In this document: in pieces, positions 22,816 to 63,774 of the stretch
Numbering within the stretch: the stretch's first letter is position 1
Layout: every line of letters begins with the position of its first letter
DNA from: Macrostomum lignano
Lineage: Eukaryota
DNA: 64,000 nt
NCBI GenBank assembly: GCA_002269645.1
Contig: NIVC01000230.1
Coordinates: forward strand, 372,001-436,000
Reading direction: 5' to 3'
Notes under the pieces: model-generated
The model's database searches: none
Told to the model about the DNA's origin: nothing
Seen by the model: the letters and a program-made list of their open reading frames with translations, nothing else
Program-made: the position numbers and the translations under genes

Positions 22816-25800
22816 TCAAAGATCGTGAAATATTTGCATAGCCATAATCTCTCCAGTGCTCATAGTTTGAGTAGCCACCGACGCGGTGCTGGCGGAGACC
22901 AGACTGGCGCACTGGGAGCACAGCTCCGACGCCGTCTCGGAAGCTGCGTCCGGCTGTTTGACTTCAGGCTGATAGGCAGACGGCTGACCCCCGATCAGTT
23001 TCAAATTGGCGACATTGTCGGCCAGGTTGTCTTCGAGATCGAAGTCGGCGCCGAACTCGCCGATCTCGGCCGGGTCGGAGGAACCGCCGCTGCTCACCGA
23101 CCAGCCGTCGCGCTGGTTGTCGATGTCAGACAGGAATTTCACGTCGTCGGCCAGATCGAGGAGGGTGGCGGCGGAGGATCTCGGCTGTTGGGACGGCGGG
23201 ACAGCGGAGGAGGCTGGGCGCTCCATCAGAGCTTGGTCAGACTCGCGCCACACCTGGGTGGCCCGCCATTTTGCACGGCTGTCCTTGGTGGCCAAGATGG
23301 CGTTGAAGTAGACGGTGTCGTTCACCTGGGAGGTAGGTGGGTTGGGGACTGAGCATGACTGCTGTGTGAGGCTGGACTGTTCGATGGCTGTCAGCCCGAG
23401 GATCTGGGAGGCCGGCACAGCAACTGAGGATCTGGGAGGCTGGCCCAGCAACTGAGGATCTGAGAGGCTGGCCCAGCAACTGGGGATCTGGGAGGCTGGC
23501 CCAGCAACTGGGGATCTGAGAGGCTGGCCCAGCAACTGGGGATCTGGGAGGCTGGCCCAGCAACTGAGGATCTGGGAGGCTGGCCCAGCAACTGAGGATC
23601 TGGGAGGCTGGCCCAGCAACTGAGGATCTGGGAGACTGGCCCAGCAACTGACACTCTGAGAGGCTGGCCCAGCAACTGGGGATCTGGGAGGCTGGCCCAG
23701 CAACTGGGGATCTGAGAGGCTGGCCCAGCAACTGAGGTTCTGGGAGACTGGCCCAGCAACTGAGGATCTGAGAGGCTGGCCCAGCAACTGAGGATCTGGG
23801 AGACTGGCCCAGCAACTGAGGATCTGAGAGGCTGGCCCAGCAACTGACACTCTGAGAGGCTGGCCCAGCAACTGAGGATCTGAGAGGCTGGCCCAGCAAC
23901 TGAGGATCTGGGAGACTGGCCCAGCAACTGGGGATCTGGGAGGCTGGCCCAGCAACTGAGGATCTGGGAGGCTGGCCCAGCAACTGAGAATCTGGGAGGC
24001 TGGCCCAGCAACTGGGGATCTGGGAGGCTGGCCCAGCAACTGAGGATCTGGGAGGCTGGCCCAGCAACTGAGAATCTGGGAGGCTGGCCCAGCAACTGGG
24101 GATCTGGGAGGCTGGCCCAGCAACTGGGGATCTGGGAGGCTGGCCCAGCAACTGAGGATCTGGGAGACTGGCCCAGCAACTGAGGATCTGGGAGGCTGGC
24201 CTAAGCAACTGGGGATCTGGGAGGCTGGCCTAAGCAACTGAGGATCTGGGAGACTGGCCCAGCAACTGAGGATCTGGGAGGCTGGCCCAGCAACTGAGGA
24301 TCTGGGAGACTGGCCCAGAGGATTCGAGCGCCAGCCCTTACCTTAAAATACTTCTGCAGGTCGTCCACGTGTTTAAAAATAGACCGATCAAAGAAAACGT
24401 GTTCGTGCCGACCCAGGTCGATGATGCCCCACAGCTTGGCGCAGTGGAACACGCGGCCTCGGCGGTTGGACAGCGAGCGAGGCGGCGGCGGATCGGCAGT
24501 TGTCGACGACGAGGACTGGCTGCTGAGCCGCAGACTGCGTCGCTGAAATTCGTTGCGCCCGAAAGCCGAACCATTCGAAACCATGGCGTCCGGCCCGGTC
24601 GAGTTTAGGTTGAACAGGCGGGGCCGCTTTCTAAGAAATTCCTCCAATTCGAGCTGCGTCCAGCCGATGAAGTTGCGGGCGGCCTCGGCGGAGTCGCCCG
24701 ACCTGCGGCGATTTTTCATATGGGCGATTTTCTATTTATATAGGCGATTTTCTATTTATATAGGCGATTTTCAATTTATATAGGCGATATTCTATTTATA
24801 TAGGCGATTTTCTACATATATTGGCTATTTTCTACATATTGGCTATTTTCTACATATATAGGCGATTTTCTATTTATATAGGCGATTTTCTACATATATA
24901 GGCGATTTTATATTTATATAGGCGATTTTCTATTTATATAGGCGATTTTCTATTTATATAGGCGATTTTCTATTTATATAGGCGATTTTCTATTTATATA
25001 GGCGATTTTCTATTTATATAGGCGATTTTCTACATATATAGGCGATTTTCTATTTATATAGGCGATTTTCTATTTATATAGGCGATTTTCTATTTATATA
25101 GGCGATTTTATATTTATATAGGCGATTTTCTACATATATAGGCGATTTTCTATTTATATAGGCGATTTTCTATTTATATAGGCGATTTTCTATTTATATA
25201 GGCGATTTTATATTTATATAGGCGATTTTCTATTTTTTATATTTATACGTGGATTTCCGGAAGGCTTTTGACTCGGTGGCCAGGCTAGCGATTGCATGGC
25301 TGCTGTCCTACTACGGCGTCCCCCCTGCACTGGTGGCTGCGGTGATGGATCTGTACAGCGATTCCAGGGCATTTGTTCAGTCGAGCGACGGCCCCACTGA
25401 TGAGTTCAGCACAAGCTCTGGCGTCCTTCAGGGCGACACGCTGGCTCCTCTGCTTTTCATCATGGTCGTGGACTACGTGCTGCGCCGGTCTCTCCATGAT
25501 GACGACGGCTATGTGCTAGTCCCACGTCGAAGCTCCCGACACCCTGCAGTCCCGCTGCCGGCTCTTGCGTATGCAGACGACATCGCACTCCTCTGTCGCG
25601 ATCCAGCTGCTGCCCAACGCGCTCTCTTAAGACTCTGCGAGGAGGGCGCTCGGGTTGGACTGATGATCAACGCACTGAAGACAGAAGTGCTGCACGTGGG
25701 CACTGATACCGCCCCGGCACTAGATCTGCCCAACGGAGACGCCATCGCGGTGTGCGAGGACTTTCGGTACCTCGGCTCCCTGGTGATGAGTCCCGACTCC

Positions 25801-28800
25801 ATCGTCTCCGACAGAAGGAATCAGGCCTGGCGTGCGGCGCACCTTCTCAGGAACGTCTTCAACTCTGCTGCAAGAGACAGCCTGAAGGTGCGCCTCTTCC
25901 GCGCTGCCGTTGAGCCTATCCTTCTGTACGGCATGGAAGCAGTGCCGATGACCGCCACGCGAGAGAAAGCCCTGGACGCGCTGTACAGGTCCCTGCTGCG
26001 CCACGCCCTGGGCGTGCACTACCCGGAGAGGCTGCCGTCCAGAGACCTGATGGTTCGCGCCGGCGTCCCAGCCCTGAGCGTCACCCTGCGCCGGCGCCGC
26101 CAGATGCTGCTGGGCCACTGTCTGAGGAGCCACGGTCGCGGCGAGCGAAACCCGCTTGCGCTGGTCCTCCTGCACCAACCGACCGAGCGGCTGCGCCGCG
26201 GCCAAGGAAGAACTGTGACGCTAATTACCACTCTGTTGGCTGACTTGCAGGCTATCGGACTTGATCCCCAGTCCGCCATGGCCTGCCCCTCCCGACTGTT
26301 CTGCGAGCGCGTGCGCGCAAAAGCTATCTAACTTTTTGCGTCTATATATATATATATAGGCGATTTTCTACATATATAGGCGATTTTCTATTTATATAGG
26401 CGATTTTATATTTATATAGGCGATTTTCTATTTATATAGGCGATTTTCTATTTATATAGGCGATTTTATATTTATATAGGCGATTTTCTACATATATAGG
26501 CGATTTTCTATTTATATAGGCGATTTTCTATTTATATAGGCGATTTTCTATTTATATAGGCGATTTTCTATTTATATAGGCGATTTTATATTTATATAGG
26601 CGATTTTCTATTTATATAGGCGATTTTCTACATTTATAGGCGATTTTATATTTATATAGGCGATTTTCTATTTATATAGGCGATTTTATATTTATATAGG
26701 CGATTTTATATTTATATAGGCGATTTTCTACATATATAGGCGATTTTCTATTTATATAGGCGATTTTCTATTTATATAGGCGATTTTATATTTATATAGG
26801 CGATTTTATATTCATATAGGCGATTTTCTATTTATATAGGCGATTTTCTACATATATAGGCGATTTTCTATTTATATAGGCGATTTTCTATTCATATAGA
26901 CGATTTTATATTTATATAGCGTTCAAATTTGTACACACACAGACAGAGTTTTGATTTTTATAGGTAGAGAGAGGCGATTTTCGTTTTATATAGGCGATTT
27001 TCTATTTATTTAGGCGATTTTCTATTTATATAGGCGATGTTCGTTTTATATAGGCGATTTTATATTTATATAGGCGATTTTATATTTATATAGGCGGTTT
27101 TATATTTATATAGGCGGTTTTATATTTATATAGGCGGTTTTATATTTATATAGGCGGTTTTATATTTATATAGGCGGTTTTATATTTATATAGGCGATTT
27201 TTTATATTTATATAGGCGGTTTTATATTTATATAGGCGGTTTTATATTATTATAGGCGATTTTTATATTTATATGGGCGAAATTCTATTTATATAGGCGA
27301 TATTGTACATATATAGGCGATTTTCTTTTTATATAGGCGATTTTTATATTTATATAGGCGATTTTCTACATATACAGGCGATTTTCTTTTTATATAGGCG
27401 ATTTTCTATTCATAGAGGCGATTTTCTACATATACGCGATTTCTACATATATGGCGATTTTCCACACGCAATCCTCTAGGGCTGCACAGACGACACTCTA
27501 CAGTCTCCAGTTCCCCAACCAACCTGGATATCACAGCGAACAGCTGCGCCAGTGGCAGCCCGCCGCCAGTCCTAGTTGCCGCTCTGTCCAGAACTCGCCT
27601 AACAAATTCCACGGCCTTGAACTCGGCTGCTGGCATTGACGCTGAGCAGGCTGTCGAGCTCACGCTACCAGTATCATCGAACGCTTCGTCGTTATAATTC
27701 GATTCGGCAGGCGTCCCCGGCAGCGAGTTGGCGAATGTGTCGTCCATGCTGCCGCCAAGAAAACCGCCGCCGCCGCCGCCTTGCGCCCGACCGGATTTCG
27801 ACAGCATACTGCGGGGTCGGCTGGTGCGAGCGGAGTGCGTGTGACGCAATCTGGAACCGGATGAAGAAGACAATGACTGCTGCTGCTGCTGGGACTGCTT
27901 CTCCTGCTGCCTGGTTGTCACGGCAGCGAACGTGTCCCGCAGGCCAACCAGTTCGCCTTGGATTTCAAACACGTGCCGATGCTTGGCTAGAAATTTAGCG
28001 AAATCTGACTGCGGCCCCACTACTGAACGAACTTCGGCCGGGGCCTGGCTGAGGTGGCCGGCCAGACTCTTTATTGGCACCCAGCGGTCCTCGCGGCGGC
28101 GGCCGAGGCGGCTCTGCGAAGTTGAAAGAGAGAAGAAATGATAAAAAATTGCCTTGCATAAAACGTCATAAAACGAGATATCACGGCACAAGTTCGTCGC
28201 CTAAAAATTCGTCAAAGAGTCGCTCTAGGGGAAATTTGAAGCGTTTTATTGTTTGAGCTATAGCCATGGGCCCTCTGAGGTAATGGCTATTGTTCGCTAG
28301 GCATATCTAACTTTAAGGTAAAAAAAAGTCAGTGAGAAATGCCCATTTTGCCTCTCCGGTGCTGAGAATGCACAGAACTTCACCTGCAATTGCTTTGCTT
28401 TTACTCGGGAGAGGCTGGCCTACACTTCAGCCAAGTCTCCGGATCTTTCCGACGTTTTCAGGCTTGAGAATCTCGGCTAGCTCGTCCGCTACCTAAGGGC
28501 TACCGGGTGAGAGACGCCAGGGATCAGCGGACTGGGCGACGACGCCCCCCCCCCCTGCATCCGGATGCGTGGAGCCCCCCTGCAGCTGAGTTACGCAGGG
28601 AGAATTGAATGCTGATGAGGAATGGCAGATGCTGAGTTGCCAGGAATACTCAGAAGCACTCTGTTCTCCCTCATCCCTAATCTAACCTCACGCACTCTGC
28701 TCTCCCACATCCCTAATCTAACCTCACGCACTCTGCTCTCCTTCATCCCTAATCTAATCTCAATCACTCTGCTCTCCCACATCCCTAATCTAACCTCACG

Positions 28801-29795: not shown

Positions 29796-32084
29796 AGTAG
29801 TGAGGAGTTTAGGCTGACCCAATAAGCAGCATGCAATAAAAGTGTTTTTTTAGTATTGACATTTGTAATATTAGTCAAAATAATTCAAATAACTACAATG
29901 AATTATAAATAAGCAAAAATTACTCAATCTAGTTTGTCATTTTAATCCATCAACCTATTAATTTAACAATTATAAACTAAATTTATTAAATTAGCTTATT
30001 TTCTTAATAAATCTAAATCTTTGAGCATTTAAAGTTGAAAGAATATTTTATATAGAGTCTTGATAAGGAATATTTTCCCTAAATTTTGACACTTATATGT
30101 TAAATCATACTTACTAGGTTTTTTATGCCAAATGGTTGCTATGGCATCTTAAAATTTTATTTGGCACCCTGAATTTGGACCCATAGTGCCAAAATGGCAC
30201 CACAAATTTTTAAGCCTAGTGCCAAAAAAATTAATGTATTTTTATGATACAGATGAAATCATTGAAGTGAAGTATATGTAGCTATGTAGGTATTGTCTTA
30301 TCTCAACTCTTGTATATGAAAAAATGAGGAAAGGATGAAGGTTGCTCAATAACTTTTTTTGGTATTGACAATAAGCAGGTCTTATATAGCTAAATGAGTA
30401 AGCAATATAAAAAACTAAGTTTTTATTATGGTCCCATTTATGAATATGGACTGAATGGACATTTCTGCGAAGTGCGAATTAAGACAAATCCGCCAAATTT
30501 ATATCGATTTAATAATTACAATTATCAGCAAATTCTATTCCATACCATCTCTAGGCAATCGCAAAATATTGTTTTGCTTGCTAGGCTATTATTTATTATT
30601 TTGTCCCTAACTATTCCAGAGGTTGGAATTGTCTAGAAATGCAAATGAAATATATTATTATTATTATTGTATCGAACTACGACTGTAACGTACTAAACAC
30701 TGATGAAATGTTAGTGTCTAATAAAATTTTCGACGCTTTGTGCTAAAACAGTAAAATAATATACTTTAGCCATCAAAGTGTTAAAAGAAAATTTAACGTT
30801 GAAATATGATGAAAATATTCTATTAAACGTAATGAGTCACGTCGAGACAAGGAGCTAATCTGGACTGAATCAGTTGATCAACAACCCAAGAAAATCGATA
30901 TTTCCCTTCTATTTTGAATTGAATAACTATTCATTCGCACATTTACTTTTTATGGTACCAGTTGTGATGTAGGAACACTTTTAGAACTTTAATTTTAAGA
31001 AAAGAAAATAAGAACCAATTGACCGAATTTAGGCATGACAATAGACTAGTTAACTAGTATTCAATGGCCTGTTGAGTGAGTATAAAAAACAGTACACAGT
31101 AAATAGGATAGTCTATCCTGCATGGTACCATTTCTATGTGCTTATGGTTCAGCAACTTGGCTATATTTCTTGTTCTTACCATTGCCTTGTGACTGCAATC
31201 AACTGGCAGCAGTATAGACTATAATTGGCTACCTAAAATACAGATAATGCCTATTAGATCGGCTAGTTTCTGCTTGATAACTCAGTTTGTCCTTCATAAA
31301 GCTAGTGGCCTAGGCTGCATTAGTTGACTAGCTAGTGGCCTGGATTCCATTCCATTTATGTCTTCCAAAATTGTCTGAACCAGTCATTGATTCAGTTAGA
31401 GCAAATAGTAAAAAAGGAAAAGCATTTAAATAGCATTTAATAGCATGTGCAAATTTAAATGTCAAGTTCTTTGCATAAAGTTAAATGCTTTTTACCTGCA
31501 AAAGGCCCTGGATATAAAGGTTCTTTTTTCAAGCACACTGGAAAGCCTTATATTTTTGTTCTTATGCAGTGTCCCAATAATGTTTGAGTATTGATTTGGT
31601 TGCCACAAACCATGGCATATGATAGTTGTGCATAAGCTGCCTTGCTTTTAGATAGTTAAGGCAATAATGTGGATCTGATGGCTATGGCTCCCTGATAGAT
31701 TAGCCATCTTAGTATTGATTATTGCCTTTCCTCTTAGATGTATCCTTGACCTTGGCTAGCCTGCATAGGCTGATTGGTCCTAGCCATCAAGACTAAAAAT
31801 GCTATGAATGGAAGAGTTGTTAGCATTAAAAGAGATATTAGACAAGGAATTAATTATTTTATGAATATCTGATTTCAGTATGAAGTAAAATTCAATGAAT
31901 GGGTTTCATTAAGTGGCTTTGTGATAATGGCTATAATGTCTACCATTTCAAATCTGCACTTGTCTATAATTCTATATTTGTGTTTCATTTAAAAAGCAAT
32001 GGGTTTATGGTCACTAGTCTCTTACTATTTGACTGGCCAGGCTGAGGTGTTGACTTTGTTATTGTCTACTTTTTGTTGTTGCTG

Positions 32085-33660
32085 TGTGTATGTGTATGTG
32101 TGTGTGTGTGTGTATGTGTATTGTGTATATGCCACCGGTGCAGTCTAATATTCTGCGAATCTGGTAAGGAACCAATTCCAGTAAGCAAGCGCGCTTGGCT
32201 CCTTGGCCCACAAGTCGGTGGCGTTGCCAATACCGAGCTGCTGCCTGCACGTCCAGGTGGCTGGGCAGTCACAGAGGTGGTCGACCATTTCCGGCTCCAG
32301 TTTGCAGGCCCGACACAGCCTATCGTCGGCGCGTCTGATGTGCAGGTTGTAAGCTTGAAGTTGGATTGAGTGGCTGGAGCGGAAGTGGCGCAGGCTCAGC
32401 GCTTTGGTACGATTTCCGAAGCTCGCTCGCTGCACCTTGGCTTCCCTGCCGTAGGTCTTGTGGCTCTGGTCGTGCGTGAACCTTCTCGGTAGTTGCCTCT
32501 GGAGGACTCTACTCATGATGCTGGCGCCAACCGGCATGTTGTCCTGTGGCATGGCTGCGGCTTCACCAGCTGCCTTAGCTGCTTCATTTCCGGGGAGGCC
32601 GCAGTGAGCTGGTATCCAGATCATAGCCACCTTGCGGCTGCACTCCCCGAGGTGTGCCAGCAGGTGCCGGATTTTAATGGCGGCCGGCATCCGGGATTCG
32701 CCTGTGATGGCTTGCAGCGCGCTGCGGCTGTCAGTGGCTATATGGGCATGGTGCCATGGTTTGTCCAGTTTGCACAGCCAGTCAATAGCCGCCAGCAGGG
32801 CGACTAGCTCGGCAGCGGTTGAGGAGCAGGGCTGCCCCGCTGGAATGGGCAGTGTGGTGATATTGTCAGAGAGTGCAACAGTGAGTGGCGGCGTGACCTT
32901 GTCAATGAGGATGCCAGCCCCTCCGCTGCCATCTTTGAGAACTGCTCCGTCGGTGTAAATGATGAAATCCGGTTGTGAGATAACATCAAGCAGGCGGGAC
33001 CTCGCGAGCGCGCAATTGGCCTCAGTGGTCTCTGCCCTTTCTGCTTCGGCTTGGATAGAGGCATACATGCGCAACTGCTGGCCGACCTGGCCGATCTGGC
33101 CACCGTAAATTGTGGTGGACCAGGGGTAAGTCGCAAAAATTCCCAGCCTGAAGAATACAGACATAGTACTAATTAGATGACGAGGCATTTATACCTTATA
33201 AGACAGTCATAGTTACTCCTGCCGTTTACCCAAAATTGCGTTAGGGTTTATTTTACAGGTAAGTCACATTTTTGGTCAAAAAGTAAGTCGCATGGCCAGT
33301 GTAAATCAGGGGGGTTGCGCATGTATGGATAGGGGCGAACTGCCACTTGCGCCAAGGCGGGATGGGTGGGGCGTTGGGCAGCCAGTTTTTGTGCAGCAGC
33401 CCTTCCTCCTCCAACAGTTTCCGCGCCTGGATCCTCTAGCCAGTTCTACGGAGCCATTGACAGAGCGTCTGCCTGGCAATGTAACCACGGTGCGACTGTT
33501 CCGGCTTGCGGAGCCAGCGATCTAGCTTTGCTGCCCATGTGAGACGGCACAGGATCTCAAGCTCAGGGAGCTCCGCTTCGCACATGAGGGCATTGACCAG
33601 CGTAGTGGCTAGGAGACCTGTGATAATGCGGCAGGTGTGGCGCTGCAGTGTGTTGTTGCT
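32085..33660 (-). mobile_element. Degenerate 5'-truncated I-group LINE (connection domain, RNase H, Cys/His knuckle) with a (CA)n tail
   Basis: LQRHTCRIITGLLATTLVNALMCEAELP, then IYTDGAV, STAAELVAL, TDSRSAL, WIPAHCGLPGNE and CRACKLEPEMVDHLCDCP. In-frame TAG near 33437 and a 147-bp insertion. The last RNase H Asp is missing. Confidence 0.85.
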
Positions 33661-34665: not shown

Positions 34666-37600
34666 ATGTCTGGAAATGACCAGCCAAGCGACCAAGATAT
34701 GGACGAAGTTGTTTCTAATTCGGCTGCATTAGACAATAGCTCTGATTCTTCATCATCTGAAGTGTCAAATGATGACACAGGCCTAAGCAATGCGACTTGC
34801 GTTCAAGATCTGTTCGAACACTATCTACTTAAGCAAGAATCGTTTGGATCTCAATCAGTTCTCTATTGCATCCCGTGTTTTGAAGGTAGCAGAGCTGCTC
34901 GATCATTTTCCAAGCTCTCCGTGCTGGATGTGCAGCGCTTGCTGTAAGTCAGAGATGCTAGATTTTAACTGTTGATATTAAGAGAGAGATGACAAAGTGA
35001 GCCAAGATGCGGGAAAATAGGCCTGTCAAGCAACATGTAGATAGGCAGGTACAAACACAGGCAGAGAACAGATCCAAACAGGAATTAGATACAAATTAAC
35101 AAAGACGTACAGGTGCAGACAGGTATAATACAGGTACAAAAACGGACAGATGGACAGGTACAAAGACAGGCAGATGGACAGGTATAGAGACGGATAAATG
35201 GACAGGTATAGAGACGGGTAGATGGACAGGTACAAAGACAGGCAGATGGACAGGTACAAAAACGGACAGATGGACAGGTACAAAGACAGGCAGATGGATA
35301 GGTACAAAGGCAGATGGACAGGTACAAAGACAGGCAGATAGACAGGTACAACGACAGGCAGATAGACAGGTACAAAGACAGGCAGATGGACAGGTACAAA
35401 GACATGCAGATGGACAGGTACAAAAACGGGCAGATGGACAGGTACAAAGACGGGCAGATGGACAGGTACAGAGATGGGCAGATGGACAGGTACGTACAGA
35501 CAGGCAGATGGACAGGTATAAAGACAGGTAGATGGACAGGTACGAAGATGGGCAGATGGACAGGTACAAAGACGGGCAGATGGACAGGTACAAAGACAGG
35601 CAGATAGGCAGGTACAAAGACAGGCAGATAGGCAGGTACAAAGACAGGCAGATGGACAGGTACAAAGACAGGCAGATGGACAGGTACAAAGACAGGCAGA
35701 TGGATAGGTACAAAGACAGGCAGATAGGCAGGTACAAAGACAGGCAGATGGACAGGTACAAAGACAGGCAGATGGACAGGTACAAAGACAGGCAGATGGA
35801 CAGGTACAAAGACAGGCAGATGGACAGGTACAAAGACAGGCAGATGGACAGGTACAAAGACAGGCAGATGGACAGGTACAAAGACAGGCAGATGGACAGG
35901 TACAAAGACAGGCAGATGGATAGGTACAAAGACAGGCAGATAGGCAGGTACAAAGACAGGCAGATGGACAGGTACAAAGACAGGCAGATGGACAGGTACA
36001 AAGACAAGCAGATGGACAGGTACAAAGACAAGCAGATGGACAGGTACAAAGACAGGCAGATGGACAGGTACAACAACAGAGCGATGGGCTGACCCAACAC
36101 GTTAACAGACAGGTAGAAAAAAATCGCCAGACAGAAAGACAAATTAATCGAACACAAACCCCCAAAATTTTAGCAACCCATCGTCCAAGGGCAATCTATC
36201 AACTGGCCTGCTGATGACAAAAGACGATGAAAGTGCCCTGAACAATGATGACGCTGCCTTGAGTCAGTTTCGTCAATATGTAGTTTCCCATCTGTCTGGC
36301 AGCAATGGTGATGATCACGCCAAGGCATTGGAGAATTACACAGCCAAACAGCTGCTCAAGCGGCGCAACACCGGATTCGTTCAGGGCCTGTTTCGAGCAG
36401 CTCTTCTAGAAATTGAGAGTCCACGCTCCATGTCCACGTTTAAAAGCATAGTTAAGCTTATCTTCACTACAATGCAGAGTCGCATTGTCGGTATTGAGTA
36501 AGTGTGCTGATTACATATCTATGTACCTGTGTGTTTACATCTATCTGCCTGTGTATTTGCATATCTATCTACCTGTGTATGTACATCTTTATCTACCTGT
36601 GTATGTACATATCTATCTACCTGTGTATGTACATCTTTATCTACCTGTGTATGTACATCTCTATCTACCTGTGTATGTAAATCTCTATCTACCTGTGTAT
36701 GTACATCTCTATCTACCTGTGTATGTACATCTCTATCTACCTGTGTATGTACATCTTTATCTACCTGTGTATGTTCACCTCTATCTACCTGTGTATGTAA
36801 ATCTCTGTCTACCTGTGTATGTACATCTCTATATACCTGTGTATGTACATCTCTATCTACCTGTGTATGTACATCTCTATCTACCTGTGTATGTAAATCT
36901 CTATCTACCTGTGTATGTACATCTCTATCTACCTGTGTATGTACATCTCTATCTACCTGTGTATGTACATCTATCTACCTGTGTATGTACATCTTTATCT
37001 ACCTGTGTATGTACATCTCTATCTACCTGTGTATGTAAATCTCTATCTACCTGTGTATGTACATCTCTATCTACCTGTGTATGTACATCTCTATCTACCT
37101 GTGTATGTACATCTATCTACCTGTGTATGTACATCTTTATCTACCTGTGTATGTTCACCTCTATATACCTGTGTATGTAAATCTCTATCTACCTGTGTAT
37201 GCACATCTCTGTCTACCTGTGTATGTACATCTCTACCTGTGTATGCACATCTCTGTCTACCTGTGTATTTGCATCTCTATCTATCTGTTTATTTACATCT
37301 CTATCTACCTGTGTATGTACATTTCTACATACATAGCTACATCTTTACATAGCTTCATGATATCTACCTGTTTATCTGTCTGTAATCCTCCCCCATTGCT
37401 TATATTTTGCAGCACAAACTTCATCGAGCTGTGCAATATCCTCAGCGCCTGTCTGGCCTCACACAGCCGCGACAACATTCGCCGAGTGCTGCCGTCAACA
37501 GGCGAATCGGCTCTGTTCACGGTGCTGTGCGATGTCCAACTGATAAGAAGCATGGGCTGCGTGCTGCTAGTAGCCAGAGACAAGAATGGCCAGCCAATCG

Positions 37601-40476
37601 CTGTGCCAGTTGAATCAAGCGTTAGTTATTCCGATATTAAATTTAAAAAGGCCGACAGCGATGAGCTGGCCAAGCAGTTCATTGAAGATCTGCGTCAAGC
37701 CAGCGTCCCGCTGAATAGTCTTGTCGGCGTCGTCACCGAAGGCTATTATAGCGCCGATGCGTTTGCTAATAGCGTGAGAAAACTGCTCAAGCTATCCCCT
37801 AGCGACAGTGATCAACTATTGCCATTCAGTTCTGACGCGGCAGCCGCCTTAAACGATACGGTTGAGAATAATCGTTGCGGCCTGGCTTATCGCTGTGAAG
37901 ATCGAGCTCACAAGTTCGAATGCTTGCACTGGCATGTTGACCTGCCGGACACCGCTTCGCCTGACTGCAATCGGCATTACGCTTTGAACATCTATTACGA
38001 ATTCGAGGCCTTGGCAACGCACTATGACAAGTTCTATGAGGTGTATCACTGGCGCAGCCAGAAGTACGAAGGCGAATTCAATAACAGAGATAAGCGGGAC
38101 ATGTTTGGCAGCGATTTTGTTGCCGACCTGTTGTGCCTGATTGATTTGCTGGGCCCAATCAAATCTCTGATTGAGATTGCTCAGAATGACCAACTGCCTC
38201 ACTGGAAGTTCCGTCTGCTGTCTGGCTCAGTTGCCAGCTACTTGGCTAAGCGGGCTGCGGAATTCCGCATTGAACTGTACCCGAGTCTGCTCAAAGCTGG
38301 CGGCTTCGACTCCATCCGGCCCGGTGGCAGCTACCTGGGGGTGCCGCTGGTGCAGGGCTGGAATGTTGGCGAGACTCCGTTTACGTTCGATTCCGAAGGG
38401 CCTGTCGATCAGAAGCTGCTCCGTAGTCAAGCGGACATTGAGAGAGACGTGACCGAATTCGCTGCCGCACTTCATCGCAGCTTTGTCCAACAGGTTGAGT
38501 CCTACTCAGCCTCCGCTCCATCAATTGTGAATGATGCGGCAGTGATGGATGCTGGACAGATTTTGTGCCTGTTGGCCAGCAGCGATGCGTCAGCAGAGGT
38601 TGAGGCATTGGCCAGGTCAGCAGCCGCAGAGAGGCTGGTCTTAGCAGCTGCTCAGCACAGACAGATGTCGCTGGTTTCCACAGCGAGCGTCGCTTCGTAC
38701 GCAACGGCAATTCAACGCGCATTCATCAGCGGCGATGGCCGGGAGGGCTGGACGACTCCTTGCATAACTGGTCGCATTGTGAAGGTAGAGCTGGAGCCGG
38801 CGGAGCGTGAGGGCGAATTCGCTACTTGCCTTCGAGTGACAACAGAGTCTAGCGATGAGGCTGTGAGCGTTAGGCTGAATGAAGACTTCATCTACAAGTC
38901 TTTGTACTTTGACCCGAGAGTGTTCGGCTTGGCAGGACGGGACGGCTGTCTGCTGTTGGACTTTGCGCTGCACGTTGGAGGCACTCGTAAGACCTGTTCA
39001 TAAACTTTTTGTAGGCAGCTTTAAGGATCGAAGTATTCGTTGAAGCTTTAAAGCCAGAATTAATAGCTTCAGGATTGCCATTCGAAAATATATGTGATCA
39101 GTATGGCAATTTTTAAGCCTCTGTATCCGATCTAATAGCTTCAGGACTGAACTGGTAGCTTCAGGACTGAGTTGATAGCTTCAGGACTGAGTTGATAGCT
39201 TCAGGACTGAATCGATAGCTTCAGGACTGAGTTGATAGCTTCAGGACTGAATCGATAGCTTCAGGACTGAATTGATAGCTTCAGGACTGAATTATTGGCT
39301 TCAGGACTGAATTATTGGCTTCAGGACTGAATTATTGGCTTCAGGACTGAATTATTGGCTTCAGGACTGAATTGATAGCTTCAGGACTGAACTGGTAGCT
39401 TCAGGACTGAGTTGATAGCTTCAGGACTGAGTTGATAGCTTCAGGACTGAATCGATAGCTTCAGGACTGAATTGATAGCTTCAGGACTGAATTATTGGCT
39501 TCAGGACTGAATTATTGGCTTCAGGACTGAATTATCGGCTTCAGGACTGAATTGATAGCTTCAGGACTGAATTGATAGCTTCAGAACTAAGTTGATAGCT
39601 TCAGAACTGATTTATTAGCTTCAGGACTGAATTGATAGCTTCAGGACTGAGTTGATAGCTTCAGGACTGATTTATTAGCTTCAGGACTGAATTGATAGCT
39701 TCAGGACTGAGTTGATAGCTTCAGGACTGATTTATTAGCTTCAGGACTGAATTATTGGCTTCAGGACTGAATTATCGGCTTCAGGACTGAATTGATAGCT
39801 TCAGGACTCAATTAGTACCTTCATGACTCAATTGATAGCTTGAGGAGTCAATTGATAGTTTCAGGACTAAATTATGAGATTCAGAATCTGAACTATGATA
39901 TTCAGGATCTGAATTATTAGATTCAGGGCCTGAATTATGATATTTAGAACTGAGTTAATTAGATTCAGGGTCTGAATTATGAGATTCAGGATCTCAATTA
40001 TTAGATTCAGGATCTGAAATTATAAGATTCAGAAACGGAACTAATGGCTTCAGGTCAGGACCTTCAGGATTAATAGCTTAATAAAAGAAGTGGCAGACTC
40101 ATTCACCAAGCAGGTAAAAAACTCAACATCTGGATACGCGTCTTCTTTTCTCCCGCTGTCAGACGGCTTTGCCTTCAAGATCAGCTCGATGCGGCGTTCG
40201 CAAGAGAAGCGGGAGCCAGATTATCGCCATTGCTTCTACGCCCCTGAGCAAGAAAAAAAAGAAGACGAAGCCGCCCTGAAGCTGCGCACAAAACTCGGTT
40301 TCATGTTGCTATCCAATGCCGACAACGGTCACGCTCGGCTGCTTGACGAGGTTACTGATCTGTTCTTCGACGAAGAGCGCCGTGAGGAGGTTAAGAAAGG
40401 TAGTAAAGTTGACGAGACAGAGAATATTTCCAAGATTCAAGAGAAGGTCAGGCGCCGGCTGAATTTGGTGTCCTAA
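34666..40476 (+). CDS. hAT-transposase-derived (putatively domesticated) protein, 4 exons, about 829 aa
   Basis: Exons 34666-34943, 36174-36497, 37413-38986 and 40163-40476 have GT-AG sites and consistent phases (2490 nt, no internal stops). Motifs LPSTG...TVLCD, GVVTEGYY, DFVADLLCLIDLL...PHWK, VQGW and LKLRTKL resemble invertebrate hAT-like transposases as I recall them. The exon-4 acceptor was chosen on its polypyrimidine tract and phase. Confidence 0.7.
35030..36075. repeat. 24-bp minisatellite (intron 1 of the hAT-derived gene)
   Basis: Unit GACAGGTACAAAGACAGGCAGATG. Confidence 0.95.
36510..37330. repeat. 24-bp minisatellite (intron 2 of the hAT-derived gene)
   Basis: Unit GTATGTACATCTCTATCTACCTGT. 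Confidence 0.95.
39135..40060. repeat. 20-bp minisatellite with a degenerate right flank (intron 3 of the hAT-derived gene)
   Basis: Unit TAGCTTCAGGACTGAATTGA. Confidence 0.9.
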
Positions 40477-40849
40477 CAGTTTACAAATAATATGTTGCTG
40501 ACAAACGACAGAACGTTTCATTAAGCCTTTAAAACATTTTATCCAATCCAACCCACAATAGTTTGCATTTTTGTCGTAAAAATAGGCATTTTTTATTAAC
40601 TCTTCCTTTTTTACGAGTACTAGGTTTGTTTCCAGAAATTCATTCTCCGTTGTATTGTTGTCAACTATTTTCTTAACTTTGTGGCAAATTATGCTGTGCT
40701 TTTATTGTTACAAATAAAATAACATCTTTTTGCATTTATAATATGATAGCTTCAGTTGAAGCAAAAAATGCACAACATTGTGCTATTCTTGTTATACTTT
40801 GTAATTAGTGATTGTTTGGATTAGCATGGAAGTGTCTACGATGTCTTAA

Positions 40850-41275
40850 TCTTCAGGTGTTAGGCTACCATCCCCTTCAATAATCCTCAGGTGTTAGGCT
40901 ACCATCCCCTTCAATAATCCTCAGGTGTTTGGCTACCATCCCCTTCAATAATCCTCAGGTGTTAGGCTACCATCCCCTTCAATAATCCTCAGGTGTTAGG
41001 CTACCATCCCCTTCAATAATCCTCAGGTGTTAGGCTACCATCCCCTTCAATAATCCTCAGGTGTTAGGCTACCATCCCCTTCAATAATCCTCAGGTGTTA
41101 GGCTACCATCCCCTTCAATAATCCTCAGGTGTTTGGCTACCATCCCCTTCAATAATCCTCAGGTGTTAGGCTACCATCCCCTTCAATAATCCTCAGGTGT
41201 TTGGCTTCCATCCCCTTCAATAATCCTCAGGTGTTAGGCTACCATCCCCTTCAATAATCCTCAGGTGTTAGGCTT
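40850..41275. repeat. 34-bp minisatellite, about 12 copies (intergenic)
   Basis: Unit CCTCAGGTGTTAGGCTACCATCCCCTTCAATAAT. Confidence 0.95.
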
Positions 41276-41527: not shown

Positions 41528-42515
41528 ATGACTGACAGCCATGCTCAAGACGATTCGGACGATATCGCAGAGAGCGCCGTTGTTCGCCTTCGCGGGGTCC
41601 CCTATAAGGCAACAGTGGCCGATATTGAAGAGTTTTTCTCGTCAAGATTGCGCGGCTGTCAGCCCGCCAGTGTTCACATTGTTTATAATGTCAGGGGATT
41701 GTCCGCTGGACAGGCGAGTGCTGCCGTTGTTAGCGTCTGGTTGCTATGGTTTCAATTTCAGTGCAAAATGTCCTAACCTATATAGCAACTGTTTAGTGCT
41801 GTGCAAGCGTAAAATGAGCGTCATTTCAAACATAAAAGATTCATTGGGGAATTGCTGAGATGTCAAGGCTTACTGGGGAATTGCTGGGATATCAAGGCTT
41901 ACAGCTGGCGGAACTGCCGAGATGTTAAGGCTTACAGCTGGGGAATTGCTGGGATGTCAAGGCATACGGGGGAATTGCTGAGATGTCAAGGCATACGGGG
42001 GAATTGCTGAGATGTCAAGGCATACGGGGCAATTGCTGAGATGTCAAGGCATACGGGGGAATTGCTGAGATGTCAAGGCATACGGGGGAATTGCTGAGAT
42101 GTCAAGGCATACGGGGGAATTGTTGAGATGTCAAGGCATACGGGGGAATTGCTGAGATGTCAAGAATTTCAATTGCTCGCATTGTTGTCTTTCATTTTGT
42201 GTATTTTGACATAATAATTCAATGTTACTTGTTTTAAAATCAAGATACTTACAGCAGTAGTACAAGTAGTACAAATATATACGAAAAATAAATATGAATT
42301 ATTATTCTCGCGCAGGCATTCGTTGAATTCGTTGATCCTGGCGAGGCTGAAGCGGCACTGTCGCTCAACAAGCAGTACATTGGCCACCGCTATGTGGAGA
42401 TTTTCCCTTCCAATCTGGCCGAGATGAAGCGTACACTGCATCAGCAGGTGAGGCTGCAAGGTGTAGCTTGTCTGTCCGTCTGTTGTCTGTCTGTCTGTAT
42501 GTCTTAGTGTCTGTG

Positions 42516-42998: not shown

Positions 42999-45900
42999 GT
43001 CTGTTCGGTACTCATCTAATATCCAAACGCACTGGGTCGGCAGTCCCCGCAGCCAGCCGCAAAGCGCAGCTCCCGCAAAGCTACTCCTGTGGTGAAGCTG
43101 ACCGGCCTGCCCGAGTCGGCTGCTGCTCACGCAGCGGTGCTGCAGACTCTGCTTTCGTGCTGCCCCGGCGTTCGAATTGCTCCAGACGGCCTGCTGTTGG
43201 TTTTCGACAGGTTTCAACAATTTACCGGCTGCGCCTTCGTGCAGCTGCTTGGCGCGGAGGATGCCCGGCTGGTGCTGGACACGCTGGCCGCCGGGGGCGA
43301 CTCTGTCCGAGAGCTGACCGCCTCGCTCTCCAGTTCGCGAGAGGCCTATCGTGAGGCTAACAGGCAGCACCTGCTTGCCGGCCATGGTGAGAATTCGCTT
43401 GAATCTGCCTCTCCGCTCTCCCTCAGTATCCTTGAATCTGCCCCTCCGCTCCCCCCCTCAGGATCCTTGAATCTGCCTCTCCGCTCCCCCCCTCAGGATC
43501 CTTGAATCTGCCTCTCCGCTCCCCCCTCAGGATCCTTGAATCTGCCTCTCCGCTCCCCCCTCAGGATCCTTGAATCTGCCTCTCCGCTCCCCCCTCAGGA
43601 TCCTTGAATCTGCCTCTCCGCTCCCCCCCCCTCAGGATCCTTGAATCTGCCTCTCCGCTCCCCCCTCAGGATCCTTGAATCTGCCTCTCCGCTCCCCCCC
43701 TCAGGATCCTTGAATCTGCCTCTCCACTCCCCCCTCAGGATCCTTGAATCTGCCTCTCCGCTCCCCCCTCAGGATCCTTGAATCTGCCTCTCCGCTCCCC
43801 CCTCAGGATCCTTGAATCTGCCTCTCCGCTCCCCCCCCCTCAGGATCCTTGAATCTGCCTCTCCGCTCCCCCCCCCCTCAGGATCCTTGAATCTGCCCCT
43901 CCGCTGTCCCCTCAGAATCCTTGAATCTGCCTCTCCGCTCCCCCCCCTCAGGATCCTTGAATCTGCCTCTCCGCTCCCCCCCCCCTCAGGATCCTTGAAT
44001 CTGCCCCTCCGCTCTCCCTCAGAGACCTTGAATCTGCCTCTCCCTCTCTCAGATTCCTTGAACCAAGCTTGTAAAAGTACACTCTATTTCGTTAGTAAAT
44101 TTTTGCTATTCAATTTTTCACCCAAATTTCATCTTTGACTTATCTCTGAATTTTATTACAAAATGTCTGACTGCCTACTTGTAATTATATTTTAGTAGTC
44201 TAATGAGCATCATACGCTTTAAATTCAGACTATTCGACTGGCCCGTTTGGTGAAGGCGGACTCGATCCTAACGACTTGTCTGACTGTTGCGATATCGAGG
44301 ATAGCGATCCGATAGAGGAATCGGAACCGACCTCGTTCGGTTCTATTAGGCAAAGAGACGCCTCACCGTCGCTGCTGCACGGGGTTCGAGTCCGCGGACT
44401 GCCCTGGTCAGCCAACGACACAGATCTGGCGGAATTCTTTGCTCCATTGAAGCCTTGCCTAGCAACCGTTGCTCGGTCGGCGGATGGTCGCAGCTTGGGC
44501 ACCGGCACGGCCTCCTTTTACACGGCCGAGGATGCTCAGGCTGCTGTGCTCAATTGCCACAAGAAGCTTATGGGTGAGCTCAGCTCTGTTGATTCTACTT
44601 GCGCTATCGAATGTTCACGGTGTTAGATAAAACAGGCATGAAATGGGGAAAGATATGAATATGGGAAAGGGGAGAAATGGAAGGAGAGAGGTGGACGGGG
44701 TAGAGGGGGAAGCTGGAGGAGGGGAGAGGGGGAGCTGGAGGAGGGGAGAGGGGGAGCTGGAGGAGGGGAGAGGGGGAGCTGGAGGAGGGGAGAGGGGGAG
44801 CTGGAGGAGGGGAGAGGGAGCTGGAGGAGGGGAGAGGGGGAGCTGGAGGAGGGGAGACGGGGAGCTGGAAGAGGGGAGAGGGGGAGCTGGAGGAGGGAGA
44901 CGGGGAGCTGGAGGAGGGGGAGAGGGAGCTGGAGGAGGGGAGAGGGGGAGCTGGAGGAGGGGGAGAGGGAGCTGGAGGAGGGGGAGAGGGAGCTGGAGGA
45001 GGGGGAGAGGGAGCTGGAGGAGGGGAGAGGGGGAGCTGGAGGAGGGGGAGAGGGAGCTGGAGGAGGGGAGAGGGAGCTGGAGGAGGGGAGAGGGGAGCTG
45101 GAGGAGGGGGAGAGGGAGCTGGAGGAGGGGGAGAGGGAGCTGGAGGAGGGGAGAGGGGGAGCTGGAGGAGGGGAGAGGGAGCTGGAGGAGGGGGAGAGGG
45201 AGCTGGAGGAGGGGGAGAGGGAGCTGGAGGAGGGGAGAGGGGGAGCTGGAGGAGGGGAGACGGGGAGCTGGAGGAGGGGAGACGGGAGCTGGAGGAGGGG
45301 AGACGGGGAGCTGGAGGAGGGAGACGGGGAGCTGGAGGAGGGGAGACGGGGAGCTGGAGGAGGGGAGACGGGGAGCTGGAGGAGGGGAGACGGGGAGCTG
45401 GAGGAGGGGAGACGGGGAGCTGGAGGAGGGGAGACGGGGAGCTGGAGGAGGGGAGAGGGAGAGCTGGAGGAGGGGAGACGGGGAGATGGAGGAGGGGAGA
45501 CGGGGAGCTGGAGGAGGGGAGACGGGGAGCTGGAGGAGGGGAGACGGGGAGCTGGAGGAGGGGAGAGGGAGAGCTGGAGGAGGGGAGAGGGAGAGCTGGA
45601 GGAGGGGAGACGGGGAGCTGGAGGAGGGGAGAGGGAGAGCTGGAGGAGGGGAGACGGGGAGATGGAGGAGCGGAGACGGGGAGCTGGAGGAGGGGAGAGG
45701 GAGAGCTGGAGGAGGGGAGACGGGGAGCTGGAGGAGGGGAGACGGGGAGCTGGAGGAGGGGAGAGGGAGAGCTGGAGGAGGGGAGACGGGGAGCTGGAGG
45801 AGGGGAGAGGGAGAGCTGGAGGAGGGGAGACGGGGAGATGGAGGAGGGGAGAGGGAGAGCTGGAGGAGGGGAGACGGGGAGATGGAGGAGGGGAGAGGGG

Positions 45901-46038
45901 GAGCTGGAGGAGGGGAGAGGGAGAGGTTGATGGCGATAGAAAAAAAAGCGGTAGATGCTTTCAGCTTTCAAAGCAACAGAATCCTGCTTGCATTTCACAC
46001 CCGCAGGTGAGCGATATATCGAGGTTTACAAACAGTAG
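41528..46038 (+). CDS. hnRNP F/H-GRSF1-Glorund family protein with three quasi-RRMs, 5 exons, about 342 aa
   Basis: Exons 41528-41713, 42316-42447, 43053-43386, 44229-44573 and 46007-46038 (1029 nt). Motifs: VVRLRGVPY...GQ|AFVEF...IGHRYVEIF; VVKLTGLP...TGCAFVQ; VRVRGLPW...KLMG|ERYIEVY. Intron 1 has a GC donor. Confidence 0.9.
41845..42165. repeat. 29-bp minisatellite (hnRNP intron 1)
   Basis: Unit GGGGAATTGCTGAGATGTCAAGGCATACG. Confidence 0.9.
42470..42995. repeat. (GTCT)n-rich microsatellite (hnRNP intron 2)
   Basis: Direct reading of the sequence. Confidence 0.95.
43390..44065. repeat. 34-37-bp C-rich minisatellite (hnRNP intron 3)
   Basis: Unit CTTGAATCTGCCTCTCCGCTCCCCCCTCAGGATC, beginning within about 10 nt of the donor. 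Confidence 0.92.
44690..45925. repeat. 19-22-bp G/A-rich minisatellite (hnRNP intron 4)
   Basis: Unit GGAGGAGGGGAGA(G/C)GGGGAGCT, about 55-60 copies. Confidence 0.95.
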
Positions 46039-50389: not shown

Positions 50390-58980
<8,591 letters not shown>

Positions 58981-59451
58981 ATTCGCTTCTCATTATTAAC
59001 TTTAATCTCCCCCGTATTCTCAGATCCCCCATCATTTTTGCTTCAGTCTCATCAATGCCAGAAATCTGTCAATCAAACGCTATTGACGCTTCCGGCTTGT
59101 AGCATAACGTATAAAAATCCCATCTGACCATTGCGGAAGAGCCAATGCCAACAATTTGAGCCGTCTGCGTGTGCACAGTTCCCGCCAGCTGCTGGGATCA
59201 TTTGGGCTGCAATGCGGAAAAGAATCAGCACCATATTTGCGTACATAATTGGGCTGTTTAGCATGCAGCAATTGATAAATATGCTAACATAGTGGCTAAT
59301 AATAATACAATCTATTGTCAATCTTCATTGTCATGTGGTCGGCTCTGATGTAGTAGTTCTCCTAAGTCCTCCTCACTCAATCTGCGTTGCTTTCCCCCTA
59401 CATGTAATTCTCTGATCTTACGCTGATTTTACGCCATTTCCCAGAGTTCTT

Positions 59452-63735: not shown

Positions 63736-63774
63736 ATATCGCGCCTGGATATTTGACATGCTGGAATTCATTAG

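What the first reader, a model, noticed from the sequence alone, without database searches (positions are those of the whole stretch)
34666..40476. Intron-containing gene apparently domesticated from a hAT-like transposase, with catalytic motifs eroded
Seen: an uninterrupted 829-codon frame over four exons with canonical splice sites, no obvious TIRs or TSD, and embedded among host genes. Recalled from family knowledge: the motif order matches invertebrate hAT-like transposases (degenerate N-terminal CxxC finger LYCIPC; LPSTG..D; DG motif; DF..DLL..LD; GW; LRTK). The first Asp may be kept (codon 37531). The DG motif reads TEG (37738), the D/CxxH motif reads SDAAA (37834), and the Glu-bearing GGS-E motif is replaced. 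Inference: a catalytically dead, host-co-opted DNA-binding or chromatin protein, possibly a new domesticated family.
Basis: partly seen in the sequence, partly recalled or inferred. Interest (0 to 1): 0.8.

Follow-up and report, generated by a model that had tools for sequence, protein, structure and literature searches.

The report
Dead hAT-like transposase gene in flatworm
This Macrostomum lignano gene is an immobile, catalytically dead copy of a transposase from a divergent hAT-like DNA transposon that still sits intact elsewhere in the same genome; it has probably been kept as a protein-coding gene, but a host function is not shown.

Summary
Four GT-AG exons (34666-34943, 36174-36497, 37413-38986, 40163-40476) give 829 codons. 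This is GenBank gene BOX15_Mlig015288g4 of Macrostomum lignano, whose model derives from RNA-seq.

The protein has no Pfam or PDB sequence match. It belongs to a family of about 100 protein clusters from marine invertebrates. A confident AlphaFold model of an intact member (pLDDT 89) matches only the Hermes hAT transposase. Three full elements have 18-21 bp terminal inverted repeats (TIRs) and perfect 8-bp target site duplications (TSDs).

In the target, D1 is kept, D2 is Glu, DxxH reads DAAA, and both Glu of the GGxEAxxES motif are lost. The N-terminal BED-like finger is absent, and there are no TIRs or TSD.

All three introns are shared in position and phase with an intact transposon of the same clade in M. 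lignano. The introns were therefore inherited from the transposon and do not indicate domestication.

The target's branch is four times longer than its sister's, yet the frame stays open. This argues for lasting coding constraint.

No orthologue was found. One public allele carries a transposon insertion in exon 3. Domestication is plausible but unproven. It is a new member of a known kind, of moderate interest.

The parts
34666..34943 (+). Exon 1 (codons 1-92 plus 2 nt). It encodes an acidic, Ser-rich N-terminus, then the CxxC pair (C68 at 34867-34869, C71 at 34876-34878) of a conserved CCHH module.
   Evidence: The C columns are conserved 44/45 and 45/45 in the family.
34944..36173 (+). Intron 1 (phase 2, GT..AG). 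It holds a 24-bp tandem array at 35130-36073. The intron position and phase are shared with the M. lignano transposon paralogue.
36174..36497 (+). Exon 2 (324 nt, codons 93-201). It carries H132 (36289-36291) and H141 (36316-36318) of the CCHH module.
36498..37412 (+). Intron 2 (phase 2, GT..AG). It holds a 24-bp tandem array at 36512-37327 that is about 72% reverse-complementary to the intron 1 array. Its position matches the paralogue's to within one alignment column, in the same phase.
37413..38986 (+). Exon 3 (codons 201-726). It encodes the eroded RNase H-like core and a well-kept insertion-domain block. Core residues: LPSTG, then D241 at 37531-37533; E310 at 37738-37740 in place of D2; S341-D342-A-A-A345 at 37831-37845 in place of WDxAH. 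Kept block: DFVADLL..LD..P at 38113-38160, PHWK with W465 at 38203-38205, GW at 38356-38361, LNEDFIYKSLY, LLLDFALHVGGT.
38987..40162 (+). Intron 3 (phase 1, GT..AG). It holds a 20-bp tandem array at 39135-40018. It splits the codon after GGT, exactly where relatives L003, L004 and L005 have a phase-1 intron in the Glu codon of GG(T/S)-E.
40163..40476 (+). Exon 4 (codons 726-829 plus TAA at 40474-40476). H726 (38986 + 40163-40164) and F730 (40174-40176) replace the two Glu of the family motif GGxEAxxES. The rest remains recognisably homologous to the transposase C-terminus, but the GGQ, W.LP and SKVVDR..RCPF motifs are lost.

Best explanation
The locus is an immobilised, catalytically dead derivative of an intron-bearing, hAT-like DNA transposon.

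Shown:
- The gene is a four-exon, 829-codon unit of Macrostomum lignano (BOX15_Mlig015288g4).
- Its protein is homologous over its whole length to a transposase family whose fold matches Hermes and whose elements make 8-bp target duplications.
- Its closest relative is the transposase of a complete element in the same genome. All three introns are shared with that element.
- It has lost the second Asp (now Glu), the His of DxxH, both Glu of the C-terminal motif, the BED-like finger and the element ends.
- It keeps the CCHH module and the DFVxDLL..P.WK..GW block.

Inferred:
- After a copy lost its ends it was retained as an expressed protein-coding gene under a non-catalytic constraint.
- The most likely mode of action uses the retained protein scaffold rather than DNA cleavage. 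hAT transposases act as multimers (established knowledge of Hermes). The target may therefore multimerise with itself or with the intact paralogous transposase, acting as a non-catalytic subunit or a dominant-negative regulator.
- That last step is speculation.
For: Gene model and identity:
- Gene model.
- Identity with the M. lignano protein.
- The GenBank models are RNA-seq-derived 'coregenes' from which transcripts overlapping repeats were removed (PMC5730564). P0001 and P0002 use the same three junctions.

Family and its hAT character:
- Exhaustive HMMER search: 41 clusters, E = 1e-67 to the M. lignano paralogue and 2e-31 to P0006. A further 105 proteins were found, many multicopy.
- hhalign of the target against the family: probability 100%, 761 columns.
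- Fold: AlphaFold2 model of intact P0088, pLDDT 89.4, pTM 0.85. The top six PDB matches are all Hermes: E 5.5e-6 to 4e-4, probability 1.0, TM 0.51-0.64 normalised to Hermes. The next match has E 0.05.
- Mobility of the family, shown in three elements:
  - L002: TIR CCAGGGTGCATTCCATGT, TSD CATGTTTG.
  - L006: the same TIR type, TSD TGGAAATA, intact 1086-aa ORF.
  - L003 in M. lignano: 21-bp perfect TIRs, TSD GACATCAA, 6018 bp.
- Znf_SCAND3 (BED-like) finger in family members.

The target itself:
- Motif erosion.
- Shared introns.
- Long branch: 1.03 against 0.26 for its sister.
- Neutral simulation: P(no stop) = 0.016 at 5% nucleotide divergence and 0/2000 at 10%.
- No ends.
Against: - No orthologue in any other species was found, so dN/dS and synteny could not be tested.
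- The GenBank contig's allele carries a 296-bp MITE with an 8-bp TSD inside exon 3, plus a 1-nt deletion in a CCC run. At least one copy is therefore disrupted, or that copy is partly an assembly error.
- The target's own model is poor (pLDDT 61) and finds no structural match. Its fold is inferred from homology.
- No Pfam hAT dimerisation domain or DUF4371 is detected in any member.
- Nothing tested here bears on multimerisation or on any phenotype.
Confidence: 0.6

Rival explanations
1. A transcribed transposon fossil with no host function. An old copy lost its ends and is decaying, and the open frame and splice sites have simply not been hit yet.
For: - No orthologue was found.
- One public allele is disrupted by a MITE in exon 3 and has a frameshift.
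- The motifs conserved across the family are heavily eroded: 51 of 111 aligned columns kept.
- LINE fragments and tandem arrays surround the locus.
Against: - The target's branch is about 1 substitution per amino-acid site, four times its sister's.
- Under neutral substitution alone, an 829-codon frame survives 5% nucleotide divergence with P = 0.016, and never survived 10% in 2000 trials.
- Three GT-AG introns are intact.
- Erosion is patterned, not uniform. My hand tally of the conserved columns listed gives 15 of 18 kept in the DFVxDLL..PxWK..GW block, while the catalytic motifs are lost.
Confidence: 0.22
2. Still part of a mobile unit. It would be a non-autonomous element encoding a transposase-derived inhibitor (as the KP repressor of the P element), with ends lying outside the region examined or too diverged to see.
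For: - An intact autonomous relative exists in the same genome.
- 8-bp-TSD MITEs have moved recently at this very locus.
Against: - No inverted repeats link the 2.2-kb flanks.
- No match to the relative's TIR or subterminal repeats occurs anywhere in the window.
- The only database entries are near-identical M. lignano copies at a colinear locus.
Confidence: 0.08
3. The family is not hAT but belongs to another DDE superfamily with a D(2)H motif and an 8-bp TSD, such as P. The 'hAT-like' label would then be wrong.
For: - The motif is DxxH rather than the CxxH usual in hAT (the usual form is from my own knowledge of the families).
- No Pfam hAT domain is detected.
- The TIRs start CCA.., not the usual hAT YARNG.
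Against: - All six significant PDB matches are Hermes. No P-element transposase, RAG1 or Transib entry appears among the 50 listed matches.
- A BED-type finger (Znf_SCAND3) is present.
- The elements have an 8-bp TSD and short TIRs.
Confidence: 0.07
4. A still-active transposase with a non-canonical active site (D-E-x).
For: - D241 is kept.
- D2 is replaced conservatively by Glu.
Against: - Both Glu of the third motif and the His of DxxH are gone.
- The DKxTPxRxTNQA strand is rewritten with a 2-residue deletion.
- The BED-like finger is absent.
- There are no element ends to act on.
Confidence: 0.03

Closest known systems
Hermes and the hAT superfamily of DNA transposases (PDB 4D1Q, 6DWW, 8EDG)
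   Same: - The source family shares the overall fold over 620-710 aligned columns.
- The secondary-structure order of the P0088 model fits a DDE RNase H core split by a large helical insertion (my reading).
- It has a (C/D)xxH motif after the second Asp, an N-terminal BED-type finger, short TIRs and 8-bp TSDs.
   Different: - Sequence identity to Hermes is about 10%.
- No Pfam hAT dimerisation or DUF4371 match is found.
- The motif is DxxH, not CxxH.
- The proteins are about twice as long (1050-1160 aa) and carry an extra conserved CCHH module.
- The TIRs begin CCA.
- The target itself lacks catalysis, the finger and the ends.
Domesticated hAT genes (ZBED family, DAYSLEEPER, GTF2IRD2, Kat1)
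   Same: An immobile, transposase-derived coding gene without TIRs. As in most of these, the catalytic residues are lost (my own knowledge; Kat1 in PMC4763223 is the active exception).
   Different: - Those genes typically keep the BED finger and work through DNA binding. Here the BED-like finger is what was lost, and the core and insertion domain are kept.
- Those genes have orthologues across species and known phenotypes. Here none is known.
PiggyMac-like (PgmL) catalytically dead paralogues in Paramecium (PMC6143343)
   Same: Catalytically inactive transposase paralogues coexist with a catalytically intact relative. This is a possible model for a non-catalytic partner role.
   Different: - The superfamily differs (piggyBac).
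- There the active partner is itself domesticated and the interaction is demonstrated.
- Here the intact relative is a mobile element and no interaction has been tested.
Intact M. lignano element at NIVC01001309.1 (gene BOX15_Mlig015360g1; locus L003:7421-13438)
   Same: - It is the sister lineage, 36% amino-acid identical.
- All three of the target's introns are shared in position and phase.
- It comes from the same genome.
   Different: - It has perfect 21-bp TIRs and an 8-bp TSD.
- It has nine exons.
- Its BED-like finger, D, D, DxxH and GGTEAIVET motifs are all intact.

Membership tests
hAT superfamily (source family) | RNase H-like DDE core interrupted by an all-helical insertion domain, with a fold like Hermes | tested here: met
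   The P0088 model has pLDDT 89.4. All six significant PDB matches are Hermes, with probability 1.0 and TM 0.51-0.64.
hAT superfamily (source family) | 8-bp target site duplication and short terminal inverted repeats | tested here: met
   Three independent elements: L002 (CATGTTTG), L006 (TGGAAATA) and L003 (GACATCAA), with 18-21 bp TIRs.
hAT superfamily (source family) | N-terminal BED-type zinc finger | tested here: met
   Pfam Znf_SCAND3 (PF23663) scores above its cut-off in P0087, P0102 and P0154. A similar CxxC..HxxxxH finger is visible in P0006, P0007 and P0042.
hAT superfamily (source family) | Sequence match to the hAT C-terminal dimerisation domain (PF05699) or DUF4371 | tested here: not met
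   No such hit at E <= 0.1-1 in 30 or more members scanned. UniProt labels P0004 'DUF4371 domain-containing', but this could not be reproduced.
hAT superfamily (source family) | TIR 5' consensus YARNG and a CxxH motif | tested here: not met
   The TIRs begin CCAGGG or CCATAG. The motif is DxxH in 58/60 and 58/59 sequences. The consensus forms are from my own knowledge.
Active hAT-like transposase (the target itself) | Complete D-D-E triad and (C/D)xxH | tested here: not met
   D241 is kept, D2 is E310, DxxH reads D342-A-A-A345, and the two Glu are H726 and F730.
Active hAT-like transposase (the target itself) | Element ends (TIRs, TSD, subterminal repeats) | tested here: not met
Active hAT-like transposase (the target itself) | Hermes-like fold of the target protein itself | tested here: inconclusive
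   The model of P0001 has pLDDT 60.9, and no PDB match has E < 1. Homology to the family is certain.
Domesticated transposase gene | Immobile, with a single locus per genome | tested here: met
   One copy in the window. The only close database entries are M. lignano models of a colinear locus. The whole genome was not searched.
Domesticated transposase gene | Open frame kept over a divergence that would destroy a neutral sequence | tested here: met
   Branch 1.03 against 0.26. Neutral simulation. One stop in frame against 25-65 in the other frames.
Domesticated transposase gene | Spliced transcript | tested here: inconclusive
   The GenBank and UniProt models use the same three junctions. The GenBank set was built from RNA-seq (PMC5730564). 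No reads were examined here.
Domesticated transposase gene | Syntenic orthologues under purifying selection | tested here: inconclusive
   None was found in 1.84 billion representative proteins or in two metagenome scans. Genomes of other Macrostomum species could not be searched.
Domesticated transposase gene | Demonstrated host function | not testable with these tools
   This needs RNAi or knock-out experiments in M. lignano.

The most novel reading that the evidence does not exclude
The dead paralogue is retained because it acts on its own living relative. It would be a transposase-derived, non-catalytic subunit that co-assembles with the intact hAT-like transposase encoded elsewhere in the M. 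lignano genome and restrains or redirects its activity. That would be a regulator born from the element's own lineage.
Probability: 0.15. Interest if true: 0.6.

Novelty: new member of a known kind. Interest (0 to 1): 0.4.

Why it matters
Catalytically dead, immobilised hAT derivatives are a well-known route to new genes, so the kind is not new. Three things here are useful.

- The source is a widespread transposon clade of marine invertebrates that Pfam domain models do not recognise, yet it is hAT-like by fold and by target duplication.
- M. lignano, a regeneration model in which transgene integration is so far random (PMC5730564), carries an apparently intact, transcribed member with perfect ends. 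This is a candidate endogenous active transposon.
- The dead paralogue and the live element coexist in one genome. This gives a testable pair for asking how transposase relics become regulators.

The case also shows that introns shared with a mobile relative cannot be read as evidence of domestication.

Tried and rejected
- Pfam scan of the spliced protein at E <= 10: no hit.
- PDB sequence search with the protein and with a family profile: nothing.
- The spliced protein could not be submitted to the exhaustive search or to structure prediction. GenBank protein P0001 was used instead.
- The word-indexed search with the first family alignment was swamped by low-complexity words and returned only the target's own copies. 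A trimmed core alignment then worked.
- AlphaFold2 of the target with a 20-sequence alignment gave pLDDT 61 and no meaningful PDB match. The fold question was settled on an intact homologue instead.
- Comparison of the window with the GenBank contig for dN/dS failed. From 34666 onward the unique sequence is identical apart from one substitution, one indel and the MITE, so no divergence is available.
- Two metagenome scans for orthologues gave nothing. One alignment was too diverse to scan with.
- A search for a missing upstream exon encoding the BED-like finger found none on the + strand.
- Literature searches for the gene identifier and for hAT elements in Macrostomum found nothing relevant.
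- P-element, Kolobok or Transib affinity was considered because of the DxxH motif. It was rejected because none of their solved structures appears among the matches while Hermes takes the top six places.


Full report
**The observation**

Joining 34666-34943, 36174-36497, 37413-38986 and 40163-40476 gives 2490 nt, which is 829 codons and a TAA. All three introns are GT..AG. An in-frame TAG lies 24 nt upstream of the ATG (read). The other five frames of the spliced sequence hold 25-65 stops. Each intron is filled with a tandem array of 24, 24 or 20 bp.

The sequence GGT|HGFAFK straddles intron 3.

**Organism and gene**

The protein is 100% identical over its first ~700 residues to GenBank 'hypothetical protein BOX15_Mlig015288g4' of the flatworm Macrostomum lignano (P0001). 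It matches a UniProt model (P0002) at the C-terminus. The GenBank contig NIVC01003249.1 (L001) is colinear with the window.

The GenBank gene set was built from a genome-guided RNA-seq assembly. Transcripts overlapping repeat annotation were removed from it (PMC5730564). P0001 and P0002 use the same three junctions. A spliced transcript is therefore supported indirectly.

**Protein family**

Pfam and PDB sequence searches find nothing. An exhaustive HMMER search of 1.84 billion representative proteins finds 41 clusters. A trimmed profile finds 105 more proteins, many with 10-47 near-identical members. They come from eukaryotic contigs in public assemblies, including the octocoral Paramuricea clavata.

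The family has a fixed order of motifs:
- a CxxC...H...H module;
- GNIGHSR;
- PLPSTG..PH...T-D-K(A/S)TP.R.TNQA;
- G..A-D-G.YQ;
- W-D-x-A-H-LNL;
- RF.SS.Y;
- G.DFV.DLL..LD..P...LM..Q.L..P.WK;
- FKGV.L..GW;
- LNE..Y.S.Y;
- D..L.KGG(P/S/T)-E-A..-E-S.YS.MR.QQ..GGQ.N.TL..R.K..W.LP;
- SKVVDR...RCPF.

Several full-length members also carry an N-terminal Znf_SCAND3 (BED-like) finger above the Pfam cut-off. No member matches the Pfam hAT dimerisation domain or DUF4371.

**Is the family hAT-like?**

AlphaFold2 on an intact 804-aa member (P0088), with a 68-sequence alignment, gave a confident model with pLDDT 89.4 and pTM 0.85. Foldseek against the PDB returned six matches with E <= 0.001. All six are the Hermes hAT transposase: E from 5.5e-6 to 4e-4, probability 1.0, 620-710 aligned columns, and TM 0.51-0.64 normalised to Hermes. 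The next match, a bacterial IS transposase, has E 0.05. No P-element, RAG1 or Transib structure appears in the 50 listed matches.

Three independent full elements have hAT hallmarks:
- L002: 18-bp perfect TIRs CCAGGGTGCATTCCATGT and TSD CATGTTTG. Its ORF is intronless with one in-frame stop.
- L006: the same TIR type, TSD TGGAAATA, and an intact 1086-codon ORF.
- L003, in M. lignano itself: 21-bp perfect TIRs CCATAGTCAGGAAGGTGGCAG, TSD GACATCAA, 6018 bp, and CGGCGCAC subterminal repeats.

The family is therefore a real DNA transposon family of hAT type. It is divergent from described hAT transposases: DxxH instead of CxxH, TIRs starting CCA, roughly double the length, and no Pfam hAT domain.

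**What happened to the target**

Aligned to the family and to its M. lignano sister, the target shows these changes:
- D1 is kept (D241), but the strand after it is rewritten, with a two-residue deletion.
- D2 is Glu (E310).
- WDxAH reads SDAAA.
- GNIGHSR is deleted at the exon 2/3 junction.
- RF.SS.Y reads RHYALNIY.
- GGxEAxxES reads GGTHGFAFK, so both Glu are lost (H726 and F730).
- The GGQ, W.LP and SKVVDR..RCPF motifs are gone.

The BED-like finger is absent, and no exon for it lies upstream. Of 111 aligned columns that are at least 90% conserved in the family, the target keeps 51. The two M. lignano paralogues keep about 80%.

The erosion is patterned. By my hand tally of the columns listed, the four CCHH ligands are kept, and so are 15 of 18 conserved columns in the DFVADLL..LD..P..Q..PHWK..GW block. 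No TIRs, TSD or subterminal repeats are present.

**The introns**

The gene on the L003 transposon has nine exons. It keeps D, D, DxxH and GGTEAIVET. All three introns of the target coincide with introns of that gene:
- phase 2 at RLL|NP against RFL|NP;
- phase 2 at the VG.. junction, one alignment column apart;
- phase 1 in the codon after GGT.

Two metagenome contigs (L004, L005) from unidentified organisms, whose proteins group with the M. lignano paralogues, have the same phase-1 intron inside an intact Glu codon. The non-flatworm elements are intronless at these sites.

The introns were therefore present in the transposon lineage before the target split off. They say nothing about domestication.

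**Evidence for retention as a gene**

In a neighbour-joining tree on 617 columns, the target is sister to the L003 transposase. Its terminal branch is 1.03, against 0.26 for the sister. Random substitution of the CDS leaves the 829-codon frame open with P = 0.016 at 5% nucleotide divergence, and in 0 of 2000 trials at 10%.

Taken together, the open frame, the three functional splice sites and the patterned conservation argue for a sustained coding constraint after catalysis was lost.

**Evidence against, and gaps**

- No orthologue was found in any database or scan. The fragments nearest to the target are closer to the L003 transposase than to the target.
- The GenBank allele carries a 296-bp MITE (TIR CATACATGCGCAAC, TSD TCCCCTAG) inserted in exon 3 at window 37796-37803. 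It also has a 1-nt deletion in a CCC run at 38913, which may be a long-read error.
- The rest of the unique sequence is identical between the two assemblies, so no dN/dS can be computed.

**Mechanism**

Shown: the protein cannot be a canonical DDE transposase, and it has no ends to act on.

Inferred: any activity must use what is conserved, namely the CCHH module and the helical block of the insertion domain. hAT transposases work as multimers (established knowledge of Hermes). An intact, transcribed relative is present in the same genome. The most economical hypothesis is therefore a non-catalytic subunit or dominant-negative regulator of that transposase, by analogy with the dead PgmL partners of PiggyMac (PMC6143343). 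A host function unrelated to transposition is equally open.

**Verdict**

The hAT-like origin and the catalytic death are supported. 'Domesticated' is plausible but not proven, and the intron argument is invalid. This is a new, lineage-restricted member of a known kind. Its interest is moderate, and lies mostly in the pairing of a dead paralogue with an apparently live element in a model flatworm, and in a hAT-like clade that domain databases miss.

Noticed in passing
L003:7421-13438 (M. lignano NIVC01001309.1): An apparently complete, transcribed hAT-like transposon lies between a SYF1-like gene and RPS19. It has 21-bp perfect TIRs, the 8-bp TSD GACATCAA and subterminal CGGCGCAC repeats. It carries a nine-exon transposase gene (BOX15_Mlig015360g1) with all catalytic motifs intact. 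It is a candidate active endogenous element of a model flatworm.
   Followed up: partly
L001:13206-13501, corresponding to window 37796-37803: The GenBank allele of the target has a 296-bp MITE (TIR CATACATGCGCAAC, TSD TCCCCTAG) inside exon 3; the window lacks it. L001 also has a 1-nt deletion in a CCC run at window 38913, which explains the frameshifted C-terminus of the GenBank protein.
   Followed up: yes
window 35130-36073 and 36512-37327: The 24-bp tandem arrays of introns 1 and 2 are about 72% reverse-complementary over more than 400 nt. Exon 2 (324 nt, so skipping it preserves the frame) is thus bracketed by a long imperfect inverted repeat. This could favour exon skipping or back-splicing.
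   Followed up: no
window 32088-33650: A 1.56-kb segment here is absent from the GenBank contig. It contains an RNase H ORF (32145-33188, minus strand; Pfam RNase_H E = 2e-10), probably a LINE fragment. It also holds a 76%-identical copy of the exon 3 MITE at 33062-33293.
   Followed up: partly
window 31096-31218 and 31646-31675, minus strand: Weak, colinear similarity to the N-terminal part of the M. lignano paralogues (E = 0.001 within a 2.4-kb search), including a DPHYC..L motif like their BED-like finger. This may be a decayed relic of another family member in the AT-rich stretch upstream, or it may be chance.
   Followed up: partly
L002:5656-11815 and L006:2976-8674: Two elements of the same family from unidentified animals in ENA assemblies. 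They share the TIR CCAGGGTGCATT(C/T)CATGT and a subterminal GTCCGGCGT motif, and each has a perfect 8-bp TSD. The L006 copy has an intact 1086-codon ORF.
   Followed up: yes
window 52831-55032 (minus strand) and 25249-26331 (plus strand): Retroelement ORFs. The first has RVT_1 plus RNase_H in a 733-aa ORF. The second has an RVT_1 fragment.
   Followed up: no
window 58000-64000 and 44600-46010: A 1443-aa ORF (59481-63812, plus strand) has no Pfam match and lies in a stretch with very strong negative GC skew (-0.67 to -0.78). Long repetitive ORFs on both strands at 44604-46010 lie in a 62% GC block. They are probably tandem-repeat artefacts.
   Followed up: no
window 40847-41274 and 41846-42164: Further tandem arrays lie just downstream of the gene: a 34-bp unit with 12.6 copies at 97% identity, and a 29-bp unit with 10.8 copies.
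   Followed up: no
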